The notes beneath the pieces are model-generated. The model worked only from the letters and a program-made list of their open reading frames with translations. It did not search any database and was not told the origin of the DNA. A stretch of 64,000 bases of DNA. Origin: Auanema rhodensis (lineage: Eukaryota > Animalia > Nematoda). The first letter of the stretch is position 1. Each line of letters begins with the position of its first letter. The DNA lies in NCBI GenBank assembly GCA_964057225.1, contig OZ059895.1, positions 6,138,001 to 6,202,000 of the forward strand, given 5' to 3'. The position numbers were made by a program, and so were the translations under genes. Shown one piece after another: positions 1 to 56,300 of this stretch.

Positions 1-2251
1 GTTGTTGAATCCAATAGATTAGCTGACCAATTAAGTTTTCCATTAAATCAAGAGAAAGTTCTTTCTTCTGATACTGCGAGCATGAAAGTAGAGAACTTTA
101 AGGTGTAGTTTATTTTTATTTAAACTTGATAATTTGTGTTATTTCAGCCAAAAACGGACATGGAGAAGGAGCTGGCAGCACTTGTTCAGACTAGTAAACA
201 TAACTTGACTAATGAAACAATATATACACCTGCTGAGCTAGAAATTATTAAAGCTATGAATGTAAAAGAGGTTTGTATTTCAAATATAATTATTTATTTA
301 GTTTATATCTTTTAGGCCAAAGCTCGTTTAGATTCATTGCAAAGAATGAGAGCTCTTATAAGTTATCGTGAAGCTAAGTTCAGATATGCGGCTAAAATCA
401 AATCCAAAGGGTAAACAACTAAATTTTGATGGCTTTTTCAAATCATTTATTGAAGATACCATCGTTTACTGAAGCGACAGAAGAGAAAACAGCTAGTCAA
501 GGAATTCGATGAATTATTGATAAAAGATCCCGAAGCAGCTAAAGAAAAACTTAAAGAATTAGATACGCAACGTATTTTGGAAAGAGGTTCTCTGAAGCAT
601 CATGCACGTAGTAAATTCCAACAAGAAATTCTGAAACATGCCGGTCGAGATCCCGCTGCCAAGAAAGTTTTGGAGGAGCATTTAAGGTTTATATTTGGAA
701 ACGTTCTGTATGAAATTGAATCGAATTTAGACTAGGGAGAGAACTACGAGAGAAGATTACTCAAGAATCTGATAGTGAAAATGAAGATGAAGGGGAACAG
801 GCCAAAAGCGTTGCAGATCTCATTAAGGTATTACTTTTTGTCGACCATACGGCATTTTTTAAATTAAAGTCTGCTGCCCTTGCTGCTGCCCAATCTGATG
901 AGCCTTCACGACTAGCATTTGATGAAGAAGATGAAGCTGTAACTAAGCAAAAACTTTATGAGATGAGAGCAGCTAAACGAGCCAGTGCCCAAGCATCTAA
1001 AATAAAGAGTGATGGAACGGTACTTAACTTAATATTTTATTCAAACTCATGTGGGTATACGTTGCAGATAGCTAAAGTAGAAAACGTTTTTGAAGAAGAT
1101 AATGCTTGGGATGAACCTGTTGTCGAAAAGAACGAAGAGCCTACTAAGTTGAAAACTAAGAAGAAAACACCTAAGAAAAGAAAATTAGAGAAGAATCTTG
1201 AAGAAGCAGCAGCAGCAGAAAATGGTTATTTTAGTTTTTTCCATGTAAAGCATATTTACTTCGAACTTTAGAAACTGAACCTGTATCTGTGAAGGATGTT
1301 GATCAAATATTCGAAGAAGGAACAGATGTTCTTATTAAGAAAATGCGGGATGTAAATGATTATCATAGTGAAAGAAATTGGATTCAAATTTTATAGGAAT
1401 TTGCCAGTGAAAAGCAAAGCGCTACACCCTTAAAGAAGAAAAAGAAAAAAGTTGTGAAAAAAACCGATGAAGAACCTAAAGTTGAAGAAGAGGTTGATGT
1501 AACGTTGGATCCAAAACACTTCCTTCAAGTGGAAACATCGAAAATCATGAAAGTTGCTGCCGATATGGATGATCAGCTCAATGAACTTGAGGACGAAGGT
1601 GTGGTATTATTTCGTAATACGTTCAAGTTATCATATTTTCAGATCAAAGTAAATTGATTGCTGAAGCATTCAAAGATGAAGATGTAATTGGTGAATTCGA
1701 AGAAGAAAAAGAAAGGGTACGATATCATTATATTTAAGGCAGTAATCTGAATGTTTCATTAGGTTGAAGAAGGTGAAAAGGGTAAAGACATTGATTTAAC
1801 CTTAAAAGGTTGGGGTTCTTGGACAGGACCAGGAACAACAGAAAACAAAAGAAGAAAACAGTTTATAATCAAAGCTGCTGAAAAGAAAAGAAAAGATAAA
1901 GGAAAATCAGCAGTTATCATCAAAGAAAAGGCAGAACATGTTTGTGAACTTCTGAAAACTTCGTTATCATGCTCTTTTTCAGCCTATCAACAAGATGCAA
2001 CCTCGAAATCTTCCATTCCCCTACACTAGGGTTGTTGACTATCAAACAGTTCTTAACCAACCCATTGGTAAAGATTATAATCCAACATCTGTTACACGAG
2101 ATTTATGCAAACCAAGCGTTGTTACTCAGGCAAGCCTTGATACTTCAAACTTCAAAAATGAAATGTTCTATTTAAGGGTGGTCGATCGATACGACCCATG
2201 GATAAAAAGGAAACCATTAAGAAAACCATTTATGAATCAGATGATGAATAG
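1..2251 (+). CDS. utp-14: U3 snoRNA-associated protein 14 (UTP14) homolog; multi-exon, 5' end lies outside the window
   Basis: Spliced exons give UTP14 hallmarks: YREAKFRYAAKIKSKGYHRLLKR, ERGSLKH, DLTLKGWGSWTG and LPFPY..PIGKDYN...KPSVVTQ/GGRSIRPM. Stop TAG at 2249-2251. The last intron (2130-2176) is GC-AG. Confidence 0.9.
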
Positions 2252-43206: not shown

Positions 43207-45625
43207 TTAGCTCATGCGTATCAGAGTTATACTGAGAGAGCAGAGAAGCAGGACGGCGATAATGGTGCGAATAAATTCCAGTTCGAGTGACAAAATCTCT
43301 GTAAGAAATATAGATGAAAGCTGACCATAAGAAGAAAACTGGTTTAGTATTTGGTTAGCTTGTTAATTCGCATGAATTTTTTTCTGGGACAATATATTAC
43401 AAATTGAATATATTTGTTATAATATTTACAGGCAATTACAAGCATTTTAAGATAGAAGACATAGGCAAGGTTTCACAAACCTGTTGATTCTTTAGTAGCA
43501 ATTATTTCTTCCAGTGATTTATAGAAAGACCATTTCCGGAACAACGGTGAAAAAATTAAGAAACGTTGTTTTGTCTCATAAGGAAAATAAAGAACTACAA
43601 GATGAAACAGCAAGCTAAGACAACATGCAGCCCAGATTACAATCACGAAGAGATCTGAATTATTAATAAAATTCTTTGTTTGCTTGAAAAACTCATTAAA
43701 AATTATTTACCTATCCCTGGCAGGCTATCAGAGAGAATTACTACTTTTCCCAATGCCAAATGAACACTAATACTGGTAGAATAAATTAATGAAATGAGTA
43801 TATATATTGACCATCTGCAAATATAAAGACTTCTTCTCAAACTGGATTTCTGTCAAGTTCTTAATGTTATTTAGAGGTTTTAATAAGATATTAAGATGAG
43901 TTTGAGGGAAGAATGCTCCTCGTAATGCATGGTTTATTATGTACCCTAGTACGAGCTTAACCGATCATATAACGAATGCATTAAGTAAGTACTCTTTCAA
44001 CTACAACCAATATTCTCCTCTTTCATTCTCTATTTCCTGGTTATGTCTTCCTTTTCTCCGATTTTTTAGCCAACATTCAAAATTTTATTGTAAAGTGTTC
44101 TATTTCCCCGCTCATTTGAAGTCAGCGTTTTTATTTGAGCAACTTTCTCGATTTTGAATTATTTGAGTACAAACGTTGTGGGTGTGAGCCATGCAGTAAT
44201 GAGAATGAAGGCAGATACAAGGATTGCCGATAATACAACAACTGGGAGTGTCCACCCAGCTCTCCTTAGTGCGAGTTGACATTCGACCAATGACCTGCAA
44301 AATTCTGATATTATATAAACTATAATTTTCTCTCTCGTTTTCATTTTCTCTTTCACCCGATCTCCAAAATTCGTAAAATATACAATCATTCCAAGCTAAT
44401 CGGCTCTAGTATTTTCAAAATTTATAGCACCGTCATGATATTTTTCTTTTTGAAGAGGAAAGTGAAATACTCACATAACTGTGCTCGAGTCTCTAGCATC
44501 ATCCACATACATGTTGGTGAAATTGAAAGGATCAAAATATCTGATTTTTTGAACTCCGTTTTGAATTTTCCAACCATTAATCAATTCTTCCGGGGTATCT
44601 TCATCCATGTGAAGAGCTGGAACCACATTTGAGTTGAGGAAAATTATATAAATATGTAAAAACTAACGCGCTAAACTGAATACGCTAAAATTAGAATGAT
44701 TAACCTTTAATCGACTCTAAAAAACTTTCTGTTAAATATTCAAATATTCTGTAATTTACTCTAAATATGGGATCAACAAGAAGGAATCTAGTAAGACAAT
44801 CTAATTGTTCAAAAGGAAAAGATCCTGAAGCCTCGCAATCAAATGATCCATCAAATCGGAAGAGCATCGTGACTTTAGCCCTCTGCAATTGAAAATTTAA
44901 TAATTTAAAATTAATCCAAAAAATTTTTTTTATAGAATAACCTTATAACGAGATGGGTCTGACACTCGTAGTTTAATTGTGCGACTTTTGAATGCATGGA
45001 TAGGAATACGAGAAGTGTATCCTCTTAAAATGTACAAAGCTTAACATTATTAAAAAAAAAGAGTCAATAATAATAAAATGAAATTGTAATTTTTAAAATT
45101 TACTTCGCCAAGAAATTGACAAACGGCATCCAGATACGGTAGCCATTTGGTACAACAGTCATCATTTTTCCATTTTCATCTGCCGGATTCCATCCAAGTC
45201 TGTCATCATACCATACCTAACAACAACCATAAAAGAAATCTTTTTCAAACAGATTAGTACTAATGATATGATAGAATTAAATCTTATAGTCGGGTTTTGT
45301 ATTTTTGGAATACTCAAGTGATGGATATAAAAATTTAGTGTAACATCAAGAGGTCCTTGTGCGCTAGATGGAGCTTTCTAGGAAAGTGATGTAAGAATTA
45401 TCAAAAACAAACAACCTAATGGCTTACATCAGCTCTATATCCATTAAACAAACGATTAAGAAACTCATCTTGCTCCGCCATGTAAGTTGAATTGGCTTCA
45501 TCTGTTAAACCAAGATAATTTTTCAGGAATATTAATTACCCACCATCTACGGTTTTAGACAATCTATTCAAAGATTGAGCGGCAGAAAAATTGAAAATGG
45601 CGAAAAACAGGAACGAGATCAACAT
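43207..45625 (-). CDS. Divergent Cys-loop ligand-gated ion channel subunit (lgc-type)
   Basis: Signal peptide MLISFLFFAIFNFSAA, FLNRLFNGY, GPLDVTLNF, WYDDRLGWNP, RIWMP, Cys-loop CEASGSFPFEQLDC, pre-M1 LALRR. Four hydrophobic segments lie in exons ~44173-44295, 43711-43815, 43481-43654 and 43207-43298. Confidence 0.8.
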
Positions 45626-45838
45626 AACGAAAGTTGAACACAACTGGATAGCATTAACAGATTTTGTTTGTAACCCAATATATGAGCTACGTAAACCATC
45701 ACTACAGAAAGGTCACATTCCCCTAACTATAGCGAACGTAGACGATACTTGTATACATCTGTATGGTTTATAAATATTAAAAGTATACAATAATATTCCA
45801 AACAAGGAAAACCAACAAGGAAATGATACAATTCAATA

Positions 45839-47806
45839 TTAAACAATTTTTCGTTTCTTTGCAGCAGGGCGATCAAATCCAGCCTTCGCACCACCTATAA
45901 GAAATATGAATTATATGAGAATACTTCCATGAAAACAGGACCAGCTTTTTTATTAAAGAACTGAACATTCATAGCGCTCGTTGATGCCCAGACACCTTGG
46001 TGATCCGTTGTATCTTCGGCAGTTAAGTGAGTGTATTTTGAGCGAGAAGCTTTACCAAAGTTTTTAACCTGTGTTATAATAAAAGTTAGTTTTCAAACAA
46101 AACAAAAAATATACCTGCATAACTTTGGGTAAAATAGCTTTATCGAAAACGTCGTCGTTCGTAGCTTCAGCATAGTTTCTTTTGAAGAGCTTAAAATTAA
46201 ATATTACCTAAAAATTCGAGAAAAAAAAGATACCTCATCATCTTCATCCAAGAAGAAAGCTCCTCTATGGTAGTACTTTTGCAAAAACTTGTATTTTCCT
46301 TTAGCTTGCTGCAACAAATTGGATATATATAAAATCATGATGCCAAAAAATGGTGTACCTCATTTGTGATAATTTTAGGATTAGCTTCAAGATATCTTTG
46401 TCGTTCTTCTTCGGTCATGTTGTGAATTCTCTCAAGCTCTGCCTTTTCTTTAGCCATAGCTTCACGTTCTTCTCTGAAATATTATGCATATTTTTGAAGA
46501 ATAAAAAAATCTGAAATTATTACCTATTACGCTTAATTCTTTTCATTTCTCTGATTTTCCATGCTTCATAAGCTATATTCTCACTTTCATCATCTGTATT
46601 TACGGACTCTAATTGCAAATTATCCTCTTTTTTCCTTTTCTCCGTCTCGGCTTCATCTTTTAAAACTTGTTGAACAAGCTGAAACTTGGTAATTTTTTCG
46701 AAAATTAAATTTTCACTTACAAGAGCACTGTCTTTTTTTCTCTCTTCAAGTTTTTTTTCATCTTCTTTTCTCTTCTCTTCTTCATATAATTTTTGCTTTT
46801 CTAATTCTTGAAGCGTTACTCTGTCCTTCTTACGTACAAATACCTGTAATTATATTTCATACATAAGCATCCTGAAATTATAAAATAATTAAGACTCACC
46901 GGCTTTAATCGAGGCAATGTATCGTCTTCATCGTCATCACTGGATGTTTCTTCCTCACTAGTTTCTTCATCTTCGTCCTCTTCCTCTTCTTCTTCAACTT
47001 CTTCTTTTATTTCCTAAGCAAATATTAATTCAAACATATATTATTCAGTTATTGTAAACCGTTTTAGCCATAAGTTCTTGTTCACGTTGTCGAGCTTTTT
47101 CTCTTAATAGTTGACGTCGTCTTTCATAACTTTCTTCATCACTGCCATCTTCTTCTTCCTGTTGAAAAGGAAATTCAAAACAGAAGATGAAACATTTTTT
47201 TACCACTTTCAAGGCCTCTCTTTCTTCTTCTAGTTCTAATCTACGCATTCTAGCTCTTTGACGTCGTTCCTCGATTTCTTCTTCAGTTTCTTCAACTTCT
47301 GGCTCCTTTCCCATAATCTTAATAACATCGATAACAATAACAATCAATTATTGAAATATTAAAACCTCTGGTTCTTCGATTTTACGTTCATCTCGTCTGT
47401 TATGCCGATCATCATCCCTGTGTCTGTGACGGCGATGTCTGTCTTCTTCGTGTCTAAATATAAATTAAGCTTTGAAGAATTTATAAAAAAATACCTTCTT
47501 TCTCTTTCTCGCTCCCTTTCTCTGTCACGTTCCCGTTCACTGTACTTGGTCTCTTTTTCATCTTCTTCTTCTGAATCTGATCTCGCATGTCTAGCAAACT
47601 CAGGACTAGAACATCATAGATAAAACCAATAAACATAAGAGCACAAACGTTTTTCCTGCTACATATCTATGTACTTTCACTTTTTGCATAACAATCTGCC
47701 CTTTATCATTTTTTATCGGTATAGCTCCTGTTGTAGGAAGTCTTGCAGGTCCCAGACTACGTGCATCGCCTTCTCTTTGTTCGAAGCGGGGTACAAAATC
47801 ACCCAT
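45839..47806 (-). CDS. mfap-1: Microfibrillar-associated protein 1 (spliceosomal B-complex factor)
   Basis: [117 protein letters not shown] and [12 protein letters not shown]. Confidence 0.96.
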
Positions 47807-49455
47807 TTCTAAAATTATTAAGAATAATATTGTGAGTTGTGATCCAGATATGAAATTATTCAGTAATTCTATTATTTAATTACAAATACATTACATAATT
47901 TAAACAACGATAGCATAAATAAAATGAAATTCAAATTGGTACCAAGCATTATTCGTTTACGCTTATGCAAGTCTTGGCGCATTTCCGGTGCATGTTGGCT
48001 GTATTAAATATCGCGGCAAAATACAGTAAGATTTAACAAATTTAGCATTGTTATCAAGTTTGGAGGTTTTTTAAAAAATATCTGGAGAAAATATTTGGAA
48101 GTTGGCAATGAGGAAAAATATATTTACATACTATTGATTGAGAGATTACTGAGATTATCAACATATTCTTGCATGAATAACTTGATTGTATTTCCTTAGC
48201 AGCATTGTGGGTCAATAAAAATTATTTCAACTGAAGATCAATAGAAATAATCTTCATGAACTGTTTTTTTTCTGTTTTTTATAAATCGCTATGATGATAA
48301 CACTCTTCAAAATGTCAAAATATTGCTTCAACTATGCCAGTTCTCCCCCTTTTTTTAGAAAAGAAAAAGCCTAATCAGTTTTTTTCGGAAGAGCCGTAAA
48401 AGAAGATAATAAGTATTTTGTTTGTTGTTGTAATAATGAAAATGTTCGCATCCATTCAATCGCAGACGGGTTTTTGGTTTATATTTCAACGGTACCTAAT
48501 TGATTTTCGTATAAAACCAACATTATGCAGCATATTGAAATACCTTGAGGTAAAAACTTTGAAAGTAAGGATATAGAATGAGAGGGTGACCTTGATGCTA
48601 AAAAAAGCGAATGGTTAGAGTTTCTGGACCCAATAAATTTATGAAATTCCAAATTACTAGTTGCTTATATTTATACTGAAATGATTTCTTAATGAACTTT
48701 CTAAGTTTCCTTTTTCTGACAATATAATGATCATCTAATCTGATTCGTTGAATCTCGTTTTTTCTACTTCTCTCCTCGGCTGGTATTCATTTCCAGTCAA
48801 TAAATGGAAGGAGGAGCTAAGCTTCTCTAGAGGTGAGTCGTCCTTAAAAATGAATAACAAAAACCTCAACCGGCTAGCATACTGTCCAACAGCTTCATGT
48901 GGTACCAATGTAACCAAACGATCATTGAATCCTATACCTCTCTCCTATACCTTATTTTTTCGTTCAGTTTTCATTGTGAATAACGTTGTTGAACTGCGCA
49001 TAGATTCTAAAGTTTAGGGAACAAATGAGGGGTGGAGTCTACGAGATGAGTGTTGGGAGGGAGGTATTGAAATCTGCGATTTCACGTTATTGGTTGAAGC
49101 TAGTCCAGTAAAATTGAAACTTTGAAAAATATATTAGTTAGATACTATATTTCGGTATAGTAGATAGAAGTTGTGATTTTTTGAACCTCTAAGTTTCTAT
49201 TCAATGTATAAGCTCTACTATATACTTCAATGTATCCGGTTTTGTCATTGCCGTCTAATCGAGAAGCAGAAGGACATTAGCGTTTCTCAATGGCTTTTGT
49301 CGTGCATTTTTGCATTTTTGTATAAAAAAATCATTCATTTCTCTACTTCTCCATGATTTACAACTTGTTTTTCTTGTATCTTTAACATGCCATGTTTACA
49401 GTTTCCAAGTTAGGAGCGCATATCTTCAAAACTATACAACTTTTTTTTCAGGGAA

Positions 49456-51644
49456 ATGACTAGAATATTACTATTTATTAGTTCTATTATTTTTCCTTGG
49501 GCTTTATGTCAAATCTTAAGTCCTTTATCTAGTGCTCCTAGTGATGTTCTAACAGGTTAGCCCATTATATAACTTTATGAATTTGAATTAAGTATTATTA
49601 AACTGTTTTTCTTGCTTCTCTTACCGTACCCATTATTACAGGGAATAAATCATGGACAAGAGAAGCTATTCGTCGTTTATGGCTAGAACGGAAAAAAATG
49701 GATCATACACCTTTGTTTCGATATAAAGTACTTAACAAATCAACATCTCATGCAATAGAAAACAATATTCTTTTTTCTACTATTTTCTCAAACAAACATA
49801 TAAATAATAACTAGTTGATGATTTTAATTTCTTTTTTTGTTTAGTATCCCGCATTTCCAAATGTTGAGATATTGTTCAAAAATGAGTCAGCTAGCCCTAC
49901 CGGCAGTTTGAAGCATCGATATGCATGGATGCTGATGATGTGGGCTCTAATGGAAGGACACGTCACAGAAGGTATTGATGAAATGTATAAGTATCACAAG
50001 AAATCAAACAATATATATTTTTTATTAATCATTCAAAACATTCAATCATATTATGTTATGATAAGTTTGAAATTTAGGAACAAACGTTTTTGAAGCATCA
50101 TCTGGAAATACAGCAGCATCACTTGGTTATATGTGTCGAATAGTAGGAGCAAATTTTACTTCAATTGTAAGAAATTTTATACATAATTAACAATTAATAT
50201 TTTAAATTTAAAATATTTAAATAACATTCATAAGAAAAACAAATAAAAAAAGAATAATAAGCAACCAATTGAGATAAGAGAGTAGAAGAAACGTTTAATT
50301 TTTAATTTCATTTTAATTGTGCATTTGAAGCGGTTGTACTGTTTTATGATTAGATTTATGTATCTAACAAATATTATTAAGGTTCCTGATACTATTGAAT
50401 TAATAAAACAAAAACATATTGAACAATATGGTGGAAATGTAATAAAAGTCCCAATTTCTGAAAGGTATATATCATAAGCTTTATTCAAATTATCACTTAT
50501 ATATATATATTGTAGATTAAGACGAGCTCGTGAAGAAGCTGATCGAAACAATGGTTTTTTCATGAATCAATTTGGAAATGCTGATCGAGCAGAAGATTAT
50601 CATGAATGTATTTAAATGTTTATTATTTACTCTAATTGATTCTCAATTCTTTAGCTGGAGACTATTCCTTAGAATCATTGAATATGCTACATGAAATCCT
50701 TGCTCAAATGCGTAATGATCCAGGACAGGTTGTCAAGGTGCCACATTACTTTGTACATGCAGCCGGAACAGGTGATTCAATTTAAATATAAATAGCGAAA
50801 TATAATATTTAATGATGTTCTTATAGGTGGTACTATATCATCAGTTGGGCGATATGTTAAAAAGTATGGTTTGAATACTCGAATTGTTCTTGCCGATACG
50901 CAATATTCAATATATTTTGATGTTGTTGTTAATAATAGGTATAAGAAAAACATAGATATTAGTCTCTATATTGCTCTATACACGTGTAATCTAGATTCCG
51001 TAATGAGTCTGGAGCCGAGTTATGGGTTAAACCCGGAATGGCGGGAATAGGATACGGCCCTATGGGAGCTGCTAAAAAAGGAGAGACTTCAAGGTATGCA
51101 TACTCAAATAGTTGAAAAATGTTTGCATTAGTTTAGTTTGGATCCAGCAGTGATTGATCGTGCTCTAAAAATTCCCGATCTTGCTTCTACAGCTGCAATG
51201 AAAGTCTTAAGAGATCAAGTAAATAACAACAACAATGATTAAAAACTTTGTATAATACTCAGGGAATTTCTGGTGGTACAAGTAGTGGTGTAAACTTTCT
51301 GTCATCTCTCCATATTGCTGCAACGAATACGTAAACTTTTCTTGAATTATGCATTACATTACGTATTCAAACTTCAGTCATCGAGTTGGTAATCATTTAA
51401 CAATTGCAACTATATTATCTGATCCAGCCAAATATTATGATGCAACTTATTATAATCGAACCTGGATATCTAGCAACTTTAAACAACATGGCGGCTTACG
51501 GGTATGCTTATGCAGTCGTGTAAGATATAATGCTTCATTACATCATTACAGGTTTATGATTGCTGGGTAGATGTTATTCAACGAGCTTTAGTAGAACCAA
51601 TAGATCCACTCTTTGTTGGAAATGAACAATGTCAAATTGATTGA
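49456..51644 (+). CDS. PLP-dependent cysteine-synthase-fold enzyme of the bacterial Cds1 (L-cysteine desulfhydrase)-like subfamily, with N-terminal signal peptide
   Basis: Signal-like MTRILLFISSIIFPWALC, then WTREAIRRL..HTPL, FKNESASPTGSLKHR (PLP lysine), EASSGNT, FMNQFGNADRA, VHAAGTGGTISSVGRY, IDRALKIPDLAS, GGTSSGVN and TILSDPAKYYDATYYNRTW. About 12 exons with canonical splice sites. Confidence 0.88.
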
Positions 51645-52219
51645 TAACTGAGAAAAATGAACTTCTATGTCTGTATTTGAATTAAGTTAAAAGAATCATA
51701 AATTCTTTGATGATTTTCTGTGTTTCGTATTAAATTTAGAAATCATACTTTGTTAAAGAAAAAAAAGTATAAAAACCTGTATGTAAATAGAATATTATGC
51801 TCATATTTCTATTATATTTCGTCTTGTATTAATCTGAAAAGTATATTTTATAAGAGAAATTTATTGAAAAATTACTTCCTTATATTTGATTCTAAAAGAA
51901 TTTCAAAGTAATGTTTCCATTTTTAGCGAAAAAAGAGCAGATTTTCTAAAAAAAAGTGTAAATACATAATTGGTATATGTATAATAATGATACTATACAT
52001 ACATCGGCGATGAACGCAAATTTTTATGTAAACTAAGGAAACTAAGGATATACATAGTATTTACCTTTTTTTTACCGGAAATGTTCAACTCTATATTACG
52101 GAACAGTGTTCCTTCATTTCATCATAATGTTTTTGCTAAAATAGTTCCTTAAAATCAAAAGTAAAACCTTGTTGTAGTTTTAACTTCAATTCTATTTTAT
52201 ATCTAACTGTTCTCTTAGA

Positions 52220-53313: not shown

Positions 53314-56300
53314 TCAAATCATCCAATTGCTAATAATTATAAATATTAAATTCATAACAAGATCAGACAAATATAGGCCTGATGATAAATTTGAAGAAGT
53401 CAACTTAACTCTGCTAATTTCAGCTTTTTCTAAAAAAAATTAAATTAATTATATAAATAGTTATGTTTATCATACGTTGAGTTATGAATTGATAATGAGC
53501 ATAGAACCCTGTTGCATCAAAAATATCATTCGAATAGAAAATCATTCGAAAATAATTTGATTCAGAAAGAATTGGACCACGTGGTGCTATCTTCAATTAA
53601 GTTTAATCGTTTCAATATTTCAATATTCATCAAACATACTTTACCGCAAAATCGTCTATTAGTTCGATCATGAGTTTGATAGTTACTGAATAACACGAAA
53701 TCACTTTGAGTTGTCTCATCACATCTGAAATTAGGTTGCAAGTTTGGAAATTTTAATATTTTTTTCTAGCAATTATTGGTTTTAGTTGGTTTTCAGAGTT
53801 CTATATAGGAGAAAGGTACTAAGCTTAACACAAATACCAAGGTCTAAACGGTACATATTCAGATATTGAGAACAGAGACCCCACATCTTTATTTATAGGA
53901 AACCAGAAAAGTCTGATTTTTGGGATAAAACTAGGCAGAATATATCATACAACGTAAAAATTATTGCGATAATGAATATAAGGAAAAAGAAAACTTACTG
54001 ATTAAATCCCTCAATATCAAAATATTCAAAATGTATATGAACAATTTCATCTTCAGTTCCATGAAAAATGTATTCGCAATACATATTCCGTGGATAATAT
54101 CCTGGATAGTTAACAGACCACAACTTTCCACTTGATACTATAGAAGAATTAAAAACAAATCTACATGCTGAAACAGTTTAATAAAAATATTTTCGAAAGT
54201 TTAGCCTATTTGCCTTTTGTTTTATCCACTTTTGCTTGCATATGGGCCATATTCCAATCAGAATGAAACTGATATTCCAGTACAAAGCCATAATCAATCT
54301 TAGATGATTCTCGAATAGCACGAGAAGACTGTATGAGTATGATTTGCTTTCAACAATCAGTTCATCTTACCTTTGTGGTATATTCAAGTTGCATCAAGTG
54401 ACTACTACTCATCAGCTGAGGCGGTTTTGATTCTCCACACCATTCATCGATTCGAGACAATCTGGTTCCTACACGAACATCAGCTGTTAAATTATCCACA
54501 TCTCCACATCTTATATAGATAACATATATTATAAATAAGTTATTTCTATTATATATTCTAACCTTTTTGTAATATTCATATTATCAGGAACATATAATTT
54601 GAAATGATTGAACTTAATTGATATTCGTTCATTTGGAAAACCTAAGAAAATACAAAAAGTAATGGAAAAAAGTATCAATAAACACCTTGAAAAATTATTC
54701 TGCATTTAGTTGGAAGGTTAGTATTGGCTTTATGAGTAATTTGTTTTGATGAAAAAATTCCAAACTTATCGGTTTCGGATGTGATTGAAATCAAACATTC
54801 CGTTGATCCTTCTGAATAAGAATAAATAAATAAAATTATTATCTATTTCTTTAATATTTAGTTAATATATTATATAGTATTTGAGAGAAAAACCTACGAT
54901 CAATAAAATATATTAGAAATAGTATGAATACAGCACAGTGAATATACATGAGTATTCTATATTATTTTGATTTTTCAATATATCTAATCACAGATGATCC
55001 GTGTGATGCTTCAGCAAAATGATCGAAATTTCGAAGAGATCTGACTATGGTTGGAGGGATGTATTCAGGACCTGCTGCTCCTTCAAGAGACACCGACTGC
55101 ATAAGGCATGAGCAAGAGAGAGAGTACGCAGAGATTACGAGAGTTTCGAGAAGTAGAGAAAAATGAAGAAGAGAACTTACGAATAGACTCGTCAGTAGCC
55201 AGCTGCTTCGACCAATTTTCCGTCTTCTCGTAAACGAATTCAATTACTAGCCCTCGCCCCTAGAAAAGACAGAAGTTAAGATGTACCTTCTACAATGGTG
55301 GCTGGCTACATTTTCATAGATTAGCAATAGTTCCGTTATTTCTTTTTTTTATTTTGTTTTATTACTTCTTTTTTAAAAAATATATGAAAATCTAAACATC
55401 AACCGCTTTGTCTATTCATAGTTTTCAAAATGAAATATGTACTTTGCGTAAACTTAATAATAAACATTAAAAGGTTTGAACCATCTTCTAATTAATTCTT
55501 ATTTTAAAATTATTTCAATTTTCTATAAAACCTACTCTTTTAACTTTATTCTCTCCTGCTTTGAAAAATACTAATAAACTAGAAGTGGATGAAATATATA
55601 AATTATGAGAATCCGATCTTAAGGTTTGCAGCTTAGTTTTCTGAAAGAGAATGATGAAATAACAGAAGATTTTATGTATTTTTTGTTTGTTTTGCTTTTA
55701 CAAACTAATTTTTTTCAAGAGAGTAAGCTTACTCCATGGCTTGACATTTCAAAAACATCAATTTGTGCATCTGGAGCCAAATCTATCAACGACGAAGATA
55801 AAATTGTTAAATATCCTTTGTTTTGAGGCAAAATGTATGTACAGTTTATGAAAGAAGGATAAAAATATGGAAATTCGGGTGAATACAATGTTCCCTGAAA
55901 AAAAGATTAGTAAAAGTATTTTGCAATTTTTGCAAAAATTACTTTAAGTTTTTCAACCCGATAACTATATTCTGATAATTCGGCAGCATCAGATGAATAA
56001 TTATCTGAAATTAATATATTAATTAAGCATATTCCATATTTATTAATAGTTTTTTTAAACAAAATTGAATATGATTTACCTCGATGAATAAATCGATAAT
56101 CCCCAATGAATCCTTTAGAAGGATATGCATCTTGTTGCATTTGTAGTAAAAAATGATTAAATCTATAAATTAACTTTGAAATTTTTAATTTTCTTCAATT
56201 GAAGCAGACCTTGAATAGAAAATATGCCCAGGAACTATCTCCCGTTCACAAAACTCAAAGTCGGGTTGTTCTTCAAGGTGAATTAAGCCATCCGGTGAAT

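What the first reader, a model, noticed from the sequence alone, without database searches (positions are those of the whole stretch)
49456..51644. Apparently secreted, bacterial Cds1-type cysteine desulfhydrase-like enzyme encoded by an intron-rich nematode gene
Seen in sequence: the spliced protein has a cysteine-synthase fold but not the animal CBS or CYSL/OASTL signature (SVKDR, EPTSGNT). It carries W..EAIR.L, ES..PTGSLKHR, EASSGNT, NQF.NA.RA and AGTGGT...GRY instead. Established knowledge: this motif set matches my recollection of the Cds1 subfamily typified by Mycobacterium Rv3684, an H2S-producing L-cysteine desulfhydrase. Also seen: a hydrophobic N-terminal leader, several N-glycosylation sequons (NKS, NFT, NES, NRT) and a C-terminal Cys pair (YDCW...EQCQ). 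Inference: an old bacteria-to-nematode transfer retargeted to the secretory pathway, so cysteine breakdown, H2S output or cyanide handling may occur extracellularly (gut lumen, cuticle or host interface). I recall similar uncharacterised proteins in C. elegans (e.g. F13B12.4), so the family may be known but its function is not.
Basis: partly seen in the sequence, partly recalled or inferred. Interest (0 to 1): 0.72.

Follow-up and report, generated by a model that had tools for sequence, protein, structure and literature searches.

The report
Secreted Cds1-like PLP enzyme gene, nematode
This is a real 13-exon nematode gene for a vitamin-B6 enzyme whose closest relatives outside nematodes are bacterial hydrogen-sulfide-making cysteine desulfhydrases, and it has gained the marks of a secreted glycoprotein; its chemistry is untested.

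Summary

- **Orthology:** It is single-copy in this 181-Mb genome. It is the positional orthologue of an Auanema gene (77% identity, same 12 intron positions, same neighbours) and of C. elegans T25D3.3. F13B12.4 appears to be the paralogue.
- **Family placement:** The family was found in Plectus and in the nematode groups represented by Brugia/Ascaris, Bursaphelenchus/Steinernema and Caenorhabditis/strongylids. In ML trees it is sister to bacterial Cds1 (100/100). It is separate from CysK, CysM, CBS and this genome's own CYSL/CBS genes.
- **Not a strict Cds1 member:** Orthologues score 157-231 bits against a 600-bit cut-off. Two conserved-motif positions differ (SSGNT versus SSGST, MNQF versus MDQF).
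- **Secretory routing is well supported:**
  - a leader in 34 of 39 nematode homologues and 0 of 27 bacterial ones
  - an invariant nematode-only Cys pair
  - three conserved sequons
  - SL1 spliced just before the leader ATG in a relative's transcript
  - a hookworm paralogue reported as an N-glycoprotein
- **Still inferred:** Bacterial origin is likely but the donor is unresolved, and the enzyme activity is untested. No paper on the family's function was found.

The parts
49441..49451 (+). TTTTTTTTCAG, a trans-splice-type acceptor 4 nt before the start codon
   Evidence: Read directly. In L139, a transcript contig in the Heligmosomoides cluster, the last 10 nt of SL1 sit 2 nt before the homologous leader ATG.
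49456..49555 (+). Exon 1: start codon, signal-peptide-like leader (residues 1 to about 18, nt 49456-49509) and linker with the LSSAPSD motif
   Evidence: The Kyte-Doolittle 11-residue maximum is 2.55. A comparable leader is present in 34 of 39 nematode homologues and in 0 of 27 bacterial Cds1.
49642..49727 (+). Exon 2: N-terminal helix with the conserved W..AI..LW motif shared with bacterial Cds1
49845..49971 (+). Exon 3: PTGSLKHR motif with the PLP-binding Lys85 (49911-49913); sequon N75 (49881-49889)
   Evidence: Pfam PALP profile positions 21-51, E 2.8e-4. K85, H86 and R87 are invariant in 40 nematode and 27 bacterial sequences.
50078..50166 (+). Exon 4: Asn loop SSGNT (50098-50112)
   Evidence: Pfam PALP profile positions 57-82. 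N115 is Asn in 38 of 40 nematode sequences and Ser in 26 of 27 bacterial sequences.
50382..50464 (+). Exon 5
   Evidence: same size as the Auanema exon.
50516..50607 (+). Exon 6: MNQF motif (Gln180)
50655..50771 (+). Exon 7: nematode-specific insertion, and the start of the GTGGT phosphate loop
50827..50938 (+). Exon 8: the rest of GTGGT and the ...SVGRY motif
50995..51093 (+). Exon 9: conserved sequon N272 (51002-51010) and the enlarged G-I-G-Y-G loop
   Evidence: N272 is a sequon in 34 of 40 nematode sequences and 0 of 27 bacterial ones.
51137..51218 (+). Exon 10
51263..51330 (+). Exon 11: GGTSSGVN motif; I read Ser336 as the PLP-N1 serine by analogy with CysK
51378..51501 (+). Exon 12: sequon N378 (51454-51462) and the HGGL insertion
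51552..51644 (+). Exon 13: C-terminal helical hairpin with Cys397 (51561-51563) and Cys420 (51630-51632); stop codon 51642-51644
   Evidence: The two Cys are present in 40 of 40 and 39 of 40 nematode sequences and absent from all 27 bacterial ones. In the AF2 model of the orthologue they fall in adjacent helices 390-406 and 411-420.

Best explanation
Shown:
- This is a single-copy, 13-exon nematode gene. It is the positional orthologue of C. elegans T25D3.3.
- It encodes a 423-aa fold-type II PLP enzyme of a nematode-wide family.
- That family is the sister group of bacterial L-cysteine desulfhydrase Cds1.

Strongly inferred (about 0.85): the protein enters the secretory pathway. It has a cleavable leader on an SL1-type first exon, conserved N-glycosylation sites and a nematode-only C-terminal disulfide. 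It therefore works in a lumen or outside the cell.

Inferred (about 0.65): the gene came from a bacterium into an ancestor of the chromadorean nematodes. It then gained introns, host base composition and secretory features.

Inferred (about 0.45): the intact PLP site (Lys85, Asn loop, Gln180, GTGGT, Ser336) forms an aminoacrylate from L-cysteine or a close beta-substituted amino acid. As in Cds1, this would release H2S plus pyruvate and ammonia.
For: Gene model and orthology:
- The model is open with GT-AG at all 12 introns.
- It is 77% identical to Auanema P0069 over residues 5-422, with identical intron positions and flanking synteny.
- It is the only copy in G000.
- P0093, which is C. elegans T25D3.3, falls in the same subclade.

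Family placement:
- For ten nematode orthologues the best NCBIfam model is NF052478 Cds1, at 157-231 bits. The next-best models (CysK, SbnA) score about 92-129 bits.
- In a local script the joined window protein scores 225.5 bits against a bacterial Cds1 HMM, 99.6 against CysK/M and 76.4 against CBS-like. This genome's own CYSL/CBS genes show the reverse pattern.
- In the careful ML tree the nematode clade has 100/100 support, the Cds1 clade 100/99, and the two together against CysK/CysM/CBS/own CYSL 100/100. A quick 85-row tree agrees.

Secretory routing:
- An SL1 remnant lies directly before the leader ATG in L139 and L128.
- A. ceylanicum A0A016SMI1 (P0337) is a paralogue 48% identical to the window protein. 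It is listed among adult hookworm N-glycoproteins carrying phosphorylcholine glycans (PMC13733962 Table 2).
- Its only internal sequons are the N75 and N272 equivalents.

Origin:
- In a nematode-profile search the top-ranked hits (320 bits and above) are, where named, all nematode proteins.
- The score then drops to bacterial Cds1-type proteins at 281 bits or less. No named non-nematode eukaryote is among the best 120.
- Plectus is basal within the nematode clade.

Catalytic site: the key residues are invariant, and the AF2 model of the orthologue has mean pLDDT 92.9 with a CysK/SbnA/CBS-like fold.
Against: - No activity data exist for any family member; none was found in the literature searches.
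- Orthologues score far below the Cds1 equivalog cut-off of 600 bits.
- The Asn loop is SSGNT, as in the CysK/CBS-type genes, not SSGST as in 26 of 27 bacterial Cds1. MDQF has become MNQF. The substrate-side loop is enlarged. The substrate or reaction may therefore differ.
- Nematodes are sister to, not nested in, the sampled bacterial clade, so a transfer is not proven and the donor is unknown.
- The glycoproteome evidence concerns a paralogue in another species.
- I know of no precedent for how PLP would reach a secretory lumen.
Confidence: 0.6

Rival explanations
1. Same family and same secretory routing, but different chemistry. The enzyme could be a beta-replacement synthase (cysteine, S-sulfocysteine or beta-cyanoalanine synthase, or SbnA-like), a cystine or S-alkylcysteine lyase, or a Ser/Thr dehydratase, rather than an L-cysteine desulfhydrase.
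For: - The Asn loop has the CysK/CBS-type Asn (38 of 40 nematode sequences) where bacterial Cds1 has Ser.
- MDQF has become MNQF, and the G-I-G loop is enlarged.
- The closest solved folds are CysK, SbnA, CBS, CapA1 and CmnB, at similar scores.
- From general knowledge, outside cells cysteine is mostly oxidised to cystine.
Against: The best sequence and tree affinity is to Cds1, not to any synthase. From general knowledge, many CysK-fold enzymes also release H2S from cysteine.
Confidence: 0.3
2. The gene was not transferred from bacteria. It is an old eukaryotic or animal paralogue kept only in chromadorean nematodes, or the sister placement is an artefact of long branches.
For: - Nematodes are sister to the sampled Cds1 clade, not nested within it, and both stems are long (0.95 and 0.83).
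- Only the best 120 of 552 profile hits were listed.
- An Atlas structure hit includes a chlorophyte PALP fusion.
Against: - No named non-nematode eukaryote is among the 120 best profile hits. No protein from a nematode outside Plectus and the three groups named in the report is there either.
- The next hits after the nematodes are all bacterial Cds1-type.
- The Cds1 clade spans Pseudomonadota, Actinomycetota, Myxococcota and Desulfobacterota.
- Vertical descent would need many independent losses.
Confidence: 0.3
3. The protein enters the ER but stays inside the cell, in the ER, lysosome or gut granules, rather than being exported to the gut lumen, the cuticle or the host.
For: The evidence (leader, sequons, disulfide, glycoprotein status of a paralogue) shows only entry into the secretory pathway. 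The hookworm data as read come from worm extracts, not from a demonstrated secretome.
Against: There is no C-terminal KDEL or HDEL, no second hydrophobic segment and no GPI-like tail; the protein ends ...EQCQID.
Confidence: 0.3
4. It is an ordinary cytosolic CYSL/OASTL or CBS gene, or bacterial contamination of the assembly.
For: The fold is PALP, and weak hits to CysK and CBS models exist.
Against: - It lacks SVKDR and EPTSGNT, which this genome's CYSL/CBS-like genes carry.
- It separates from them with 100/100 support.
- It has 12 introns at the same positions as in Auanema, conserved neighbours, host-like GC content and a chromosome-scale contig.
Confidence: 0.02

Closest known systems
Bacterial L-cysteine desulfhydrase Cds1 (M. 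tuberculosis Rv3684; NCBIfam NF052478)
   Same: - Fold-type II PLP enzyme.
- Shares the N-terminal W..AI helix, K(D/N)ES..TGSLKHR, EASSG.T, M.QF, AGTGGT...GR(Y/F) and a C-terminal D..Y..Y..W.
- It is the best NCBIfam hit and the sister clade in the trees.
- Rv3684 converts L-cysteine to H2S and pyruvate (PMC8389258).
   Different: - About 31-35% identity, and 157-231 bits against a 600-bit cut-off.
- Bacterial proteins are about 350 aa with no leader.
- The nematode protein adds a roughly 37-residue leader and linker, three insertions, a C-terminal hairpin with a Cys pair, and conserved sequons.
- Asn replaces Ser in the Asn loop, and MNQF replaces MDQF.
C. elegans T25D3.3 and F13B12.4 and their nematode homologues ('Putative pyridoxal-phosphate dependent protein F13B12.4')
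   Same: - The window protein belongs to this family.
- It is 60% identical to T25D3.3 (P0093), 62-65% to strongylid orthologues and 77% to Auanema.
- Leader, Cys pair and exon structure are shared.
   Different: Nothing structural. This genome keeps only the T25D3.3-type copy, while many strongylids and Caenorhabditis also have a second paralogue group. No functional paper on the family was found.
CysK/CysM O-acetylserine sulfhydrylases and nematode CYSL-1..4
   Same: Same fold and the same PLP-site layout. These are the closest solved structures, with TM-score about 0.8 normalised to the target and 21-25% identity. The Asn-loop Asn is shared.
   Different: - Different subfamily in trees and HMM scores.
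- CYSL-type genes carry SVKDR and EPTSGNT.
- From general knowledge, CYSL proteins are cytosolic.
- This genome has its own CYSL-like genes elsewhere (L003, L005, L007).
Cystathionine beta-synthase
   Same: It gives the best PDB sequence hits, at E about 1e-19, and has the same fold.
   Different: The window protein has no CBS domain pair and no haem domain, and it falls in a separate clade. The genome's CBS-like gene is L002.
Bacterial cysteine-synthase-like gene transferred to mites and Lepidoptera (beta-cyanoalanine synthase; PMC4011162)
   Same: It is a precedent for a bacterial PALP-fold gene captured by animals.
   Different: I read only the abstract listing for that case. It concerns arthropods and cyanide detoxification to beta-cyanoalanine; the lineage and recipient differ from the case here.

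Membership tests
Fold-type II PLP enzymes (Pfam PALP, PF00291) | Match to the PALP profile | tested here: met
   Exons 3 and 4 hit profile positions 21-51 and 57-82 in order (20.8 and 19.8 bits). Seven of the eight full-length homologues scanned score 110-125 bits and P0029 scores 85, all above the 35-bit cut-off.
Fold-type II PLP enzymes (Pfam PALP, PF00291) | PLP lysine, Gly-rich phosphate loop, Asn loop, and a Ser facing PLP N1 | tested here: met
   K85, GTGGT 230-234, SSGNT 112-116, Q180 and S336 are present and (near-)invariant in 40 nematode sequences.
L-cysteine desulfhydrase Cds1 (NCBIfam NF052478, equivalog) | Whole-protein score at or above the curated cut-off of 600 bits | tested here: not met
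   Orthologues score 157-231 bits. Window exons 3 and 4 score 26.2 and 15.8 bits. Vibrio proteins that UniRef names Cds1 also reach only 574 bits.
L-cysteine desulfhydrase Cds1 (NCBIfam NF052478, equivalog) | Cds1 is the best-scoring family, and the protein groups with Cds1 to the exclusion of CysK, CysM and CBS | tested here: met
   Cds1 is the best hit for all ten orthologues, by about 53-128 bits. The window protein scores 225.5 against 99.6 and 76.4 bits in local HMMs. In the tree it is sister to Cds1 with 100/100 support.
L-cysteine desulfhydrase Cds1 (NCBIfam NF052478, equivalog) | Family motif set, including SSGST and MDQF | tested here: inconclusive
   Most motifs are shared. The nematode proteins have SSGNT and MNQF where 26 of 27 and 27 of 27 bacterial sequences have SSGST and MDQF.
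L-cysteine desulfhydrase Cds1 (NCBIfam NF052478, equivalog) | Converts L-cysteine to H2S, pyruvate and ammonia | not testable with these tools
   This needs an enzyme assay. It has been shown for Rv3684 only (PMC8389258).
Nematode T25D3.3/F13B12.4 family | Full-length collinear similarity, N-terminal leader and C-terminal Cys pair | tested here: met
   Identity is 42-77% over about 400 residues to members from the Brugia/Ascaris, Bursaphelenchus/Steinernema and Caenorhabditis/strongylid groups; Plectus groups with them in the trees. The leader and Cys pair are shared. The nematode clade has 100/100 support.
Nematode T25D3.3/F13B12.4 family | Positional orthology with a named member | tested here: met
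   The 12 intron positions are the same as in the Auanema gene. An MFAP1-like gene lies upstream and a CUB-domain gene downstream in both genomes.
CYSL/OASTL and CBS | SVKDR and EPTSGNT signatures, and grouping with CysK or CBS | tested here: not met
   The window protein has SLKHR and EASSGNT. This genome's own paralogues carry the canonical signatures and group with CysK or CBS.

The most novel reading that the evidence does not exclude
An ancestor of the chromadorean nematodes captured a bacterial Cds1-type gene and turned it into a secreted, N-glycosylated, disulfide-stapled PLP enzyme. That enzyme makes H2S, or removes cysteine or cystine, outside cells: in the gut lumen or at the body surface, and at the host interface in parasites such as filariae, hookworms and Haemonchus. 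I know of no other PLP enzyme shown to work in the secretory pathway of an animal, and no homologue from any non-nematode animal was found here.
Probability: 0.3. Interest if true: 0.75.

Novelty: new variant of a known kind. Interest (0 to 1): 0.55.

Why it matters
- **A missing branch of nematode sulfur biology.** H2S, cysteine and cyanide handling in nematodes is currently explained with cytosolic CBS, CTH, MPST and CYSL enzymes. A conserved secretory-pathway relative of a validated bacterial H2S producer would add an extracellular or lumenal branch that, as far as I found, nobody has studied.
- **Relevance to parasites.** The family is present in major human and livestock parasites: Brugia, Wuchereria, Onchocerca, Ancylostoma, Necator, Haemonchus, Ascaris and Toxocara. 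No homologue from any non-nematode animal was found here. One member is a phosphorylcholine-glycosylated protein in adult hookworm. That makes the family a candidate antigen or drug target.
- **A case study in gene domestication.** It looks like a clean case of a likely bacterial gene being domesticated: it gained introns, an SL1-spliced leader exon, sequons and a disulfide.
- **Directly testable.** C. elegans T25D3.3 and F13B12.4 offer an immediate genetic and biochemical test.

Tried and rejected
- **Joined model kept out of the search tools.** Database searches used exon references or orthologue ids. The joined translation was used only inside local scripts (BLAST, hmmsearch and trees against sequences already fetched).
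- **Exon 3 against the PDB.** Only a chance hit.
- **PF00291 scan of the whole genome.** It did not list this locus, because the per-exon scores are too weak. It found the canonical PALP genes instead.
- **Second word search, with Vibrio P0128.** It returned only near-identical Vibrio proteins and added no diversity.
- **The 429-aa 'bacterial' Atlas cluster** (TM 0.82 over residues 10-415). I looked for it in 401 genomes of the phylum that holds the Desulfobacterales MAG L060. Only the seed genome had a hit, and that was an ordinary Cds1. The cluster may be the query's own cluster with unreliable taxon labels. This remains unresolved.
- **Literature.** Searches for F13B12.4, T25D3.3, Bm6003, and excretory proteomes naming this protein gave nothing on function.
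- **M. tuberculosis Rv3684 itself** could not be fetched. The NCBIfam model and 27 bacterial Cds1-type proteins stood in for it.
- **Supplementary glycopeptide tables** of PMC13733962 were not requested, because the tool holds no supplements for papers added after August 2026. The occupied site is therefore inferred, not read.
- **Contamination and a CYSL/CBS identity** were considered and rejected.
Full report
**1. The observation**

Reading 49200-51900 and the three forward frames gave a 13-exon model. The exons are:
- 49456-49555
- 49642-49727
- 49845-49971
- 50078-50166
- 50382-50464
- 50516-50607
- 50655-50771
- 50827-50938
- 50995-51093
- 51137-51218
- 51263-51330
- 51378-51501
- 51552-51644

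All 12 introns are GT-AG with T-rich acceptors. The CDS is 1272 nt, 423 codons plus stop.

Taken by reference, exons 3 and 4 hit Pfam PALP at consecutive profile positions. The window is G000:C3:6138001-6202000 in a 181-Mb, 112-contig assembly. GC content across the gene (0.27-0.33) matches the flanks.

Database searches used exon references or orthologue ids. The joined translation was used only in local scripts.

**2. Orthology and gene structure**

Exon 3, searched against 1.84 billion representative proteins, found 52 proteins. Several were full-length proteins of 417-459 aa with hydrophobic N-termini. They come from Bursaphelenchus, Dictyocaulus, Steinernema and Ditylenchus.

A word search with one of them listed about 75 further nematode proteins and then bacterial proteins. 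Against all of these, the window protein is closest to:
- Auanema sp. JU1783 P0069, 77% over residues 5-422
- strongylid proteins, 62-65%
- C. elegans P0093, 60%

P0093 is T25D3.3.

The Auanema gene (L130) has 13 exons of 103, 86, 127, 89, 83, 92, 117, 112, 99, 82, 68, 118 and 99 nt. Here they are 100, 86, 127, 89, 83, 92, 117, 112, 99, 82, 68, 124 and 93 nt. The intron positions are therefore identical.

Its neighbours are a Neur_chan_LBD gene and an MFAP1 gene upstream and a CUB-domain gene downstream. They match window 45409-47818 and 53383-56290 in the same order.

Exon 3 and a paralogue-type query (P0014) both find only this locus in G000, so the gene is single-copy here.

**3. Which family**

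For ten nematode orthologues the best NCBIfam model is always NF052478, 'L-cysteine desulfhydrase Cds1', at 157-231 bits. CysK, SbnA and CBS models follow at about 47-129 bits. All orthologues are far below the 600-bit equivalog cut-off. Vibrio proteins that UniRef names Cds1 reach 574 bits.

I built local HMMs from fetched sequences.

| Query | Cds1 HMM (bits) | CysK/M HMM (bits) | CBS-like HMM (bits) |
|---|---|---|---|
| Window protein | 225.5 | 99.6 | 76.4 |
| Own genes L002, L003, L005, L007 | 37-72 | 246-332 | 194-284 |

The four CYSL/CBS-like genes of this genome also carry S(V/I)KDR, and two of them show EPTSGNT.

ML trees were built with LG+C20+F+G4. One was a quick tree of 85 rows and one a careful tree of 58 rows. 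Rows left out of the careful tree were the long-branch outgroups L108, L109 and L112 and redundant family members. Remote PALP loci L115-L119 were never included. The own-genome rows are concatenated exon fragments and so are approximate.

| Grouping | Support in the careful tree |
|---|---|
| Nematodes plus window | 100/100 |
| Bacterial Cds1-type | 100/99 |
| The two together against CysK/CysM/CBS-like/own CYSL | 100/100 |

Plectus is basal among the nematodes (88/89).

The nematode clade is sister to the sampled bacterial clade, not nested in it.

**4. What differs from bacterial Cds1**

- A leader plus linker of about 37 residues precedes the conserved Trp.
- There are insertions after the A..A(E/D)(Y/W) motif, around the G-I-G loop, and at HGGL.
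- There is a C-terminal extension.
- Cys397 and Cys420 are present in 40 of 40 and 39 of 40 nematode sequences and in 0 of 27 bacterial ones.
- Three sequons are conserved in nematodes and almost absent from bacteria:

| Sequon | Nematodes | Bacteria |
|---|---|---|
| N75 | 28/40 | 0/27 |
| N272 | 34/40 | 0/27 |
| N378 | 26/40 | 1/27 |

- NKS35 and NFT130 are not conserved.
- The catalytic Lys, His-Arg, GTGGT, Gln and Ser are invariant in both groups.
- The Asn loop is SSGNT in 38 of 40 nematode sequences and SSGST in 26 of 27 bacterial ones. MDQF has become MNQF.

**5. Secretory routing**

- A hydrophobic 11-residue stretch (Kyte-Doolittle mean of 2.0 or more) lies in the first 40 residues of 34 of 39 nematode homologues and of the window protein. 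The exceptions are truncated or over-extended gene models. No bacterial protein exceeds 1.65.
- The ATG at 49456 follows TTTTTTTTCAG-GGAA, a trans-splice-type acceptor.
- Transcript-like, intron-free Logan contigs of relatives carry the leader. L139 is in the Heligmosomoides polygyrus 90% cluster. It starts with the last 10 nt of SL1, then GG, then the leader ATG. L128 starts with the last 7 nt of SL1, 14 nt before its ATG.
- A preprint on the Ancylostoma ceylanicum N-glycoproteome lists A0A016SMI1 among adult N-glycoproteins bearing phosphorylcholine glycans (PMC13733962 Table 2).
- That accession is P0337, a member of the P0081 cluster. It is 48% identical to the window protein. Its only internal sequons are the N75 and N272 equivalents.
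- The AF2 model of the Auanema orthologue has mean pLDDT 92.9. The two conserved Cys fall in adjacent C-terminal helices, about equidistant from the turn, which fits a stapling disulfide. No coordinates were available to measure the distance.
- The protein has no KDEL-type end and no second hydrophobic segment.

**6. Origin**

A profile built from 16 nematode members ranked nematode proteins first, down to 320 bits. The unnamed hits in that range resemble them. The score then dropped to bacterial Cds1-type proteins at 281 bits or less and 32-35% identity. No named non-nematode eukaryote appeared in the best 120 of 552 hits, and no nematode outside Plectus and the three groups already listed.

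The bacterial family is widespread. It occurs in Pseudomonadota, Actinomycetota, Myxococcota and Desulfobacterota.

This pattern, together with Plectus at the base of the nematode clade, fits one acquisition before the Plectus and Rhabditida lineages split. The sister position, the long stems and the limited listing leave room for other histories.

**7. Structure and literature**

No Cds1-family structure has been solved. The best PDB sequence hits are CBS and CysK at E about 1e-19. The best fold hits are CysK, SbnA, CBS, CapA1 and CmnB at 21-25% identity.

Rv3684 was shown to convert cysteine to H2S and pyruvate with a Km of about 11 mM (PMC8389258; PMC12910592). No paper on the function of T25D3.3 or F13B12.4 was found.

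**8. Verdict**

It needs correcting on the C. elegans orthologue and on strict Cds1 membership, and it is unproven on gene transfer and on activity. The gene belongs to an already catalogued but unstudied nematode family. The new content is the link to Cds1 and the conserved secretory adaptation.

Noticed in passing
window 45409-47818 (-) and 53383-56290 (-): An MFAP1-like gene, preceded by the end of a Neur_chan_LBD gene, lies upstream, and a CUB-domain gene lies downstream. They are collinear with the Auanema sp. JU1783 locus L130, so this genome is a fairly close relative of Auanema.
   Followed up: partly
G000 loci L002 (C6:9.39 Mb), L003 (C5:9.865 Mb), L005 (C6:13.14 Mb), L007 (C6:13.388 Mb): The genome has a CBS-like gene with two PALP modules in tandem (L002) and three CYSL/CysK-like genes. 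Three further PALP loci (L001, L004, L011) score weakly against a CysK/CBS HMM and are probably dehydratase or racemase types.
   Followed up: partly
P0057 (MetaClust, 719 aa): A family member of unknown source aligns to the window protein in three overlapping pieces. It looks like a partial tandem duplication or a fused gene model.
   Followed up: no
Atlas structure search with P0069: The best structural match is a 429-aa cluster labelled bacterial (Thermodesulfobacteriota, phylum known for only 6 of 54 members), aligned over residues 10-415. It is either the query's own cluster with poor taxon labels or a long-form bacterial relative that could be close to the donor. It was not found in 401 sampled genomes.
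   Followed up: partly
Nematode family tree: Strongylids, Caenorhabditis and Mesorhabditis carry a second paralogue group (P0014, P0081, P0087, P0100, P0252), which this genome lacks. A. ceylanicum has three adjacent gene models of that type on one contig (Y032_0200g1691 and g1692).
   Followed up: partly
L120 and L121 (one Micromonospora genome, G003): This actinomycete carries two Cds1-type genes.
   Followed up: no
Residues about 22-31 of the window protein (nt about 49519-49548): A short LS.AP.D motif after the leader is conserved across the subclade that holds the window gene and T25D3.3, and in the Brugia/Toxocara group. It could be a pro-peptide or a processing site.
   Followed up: no
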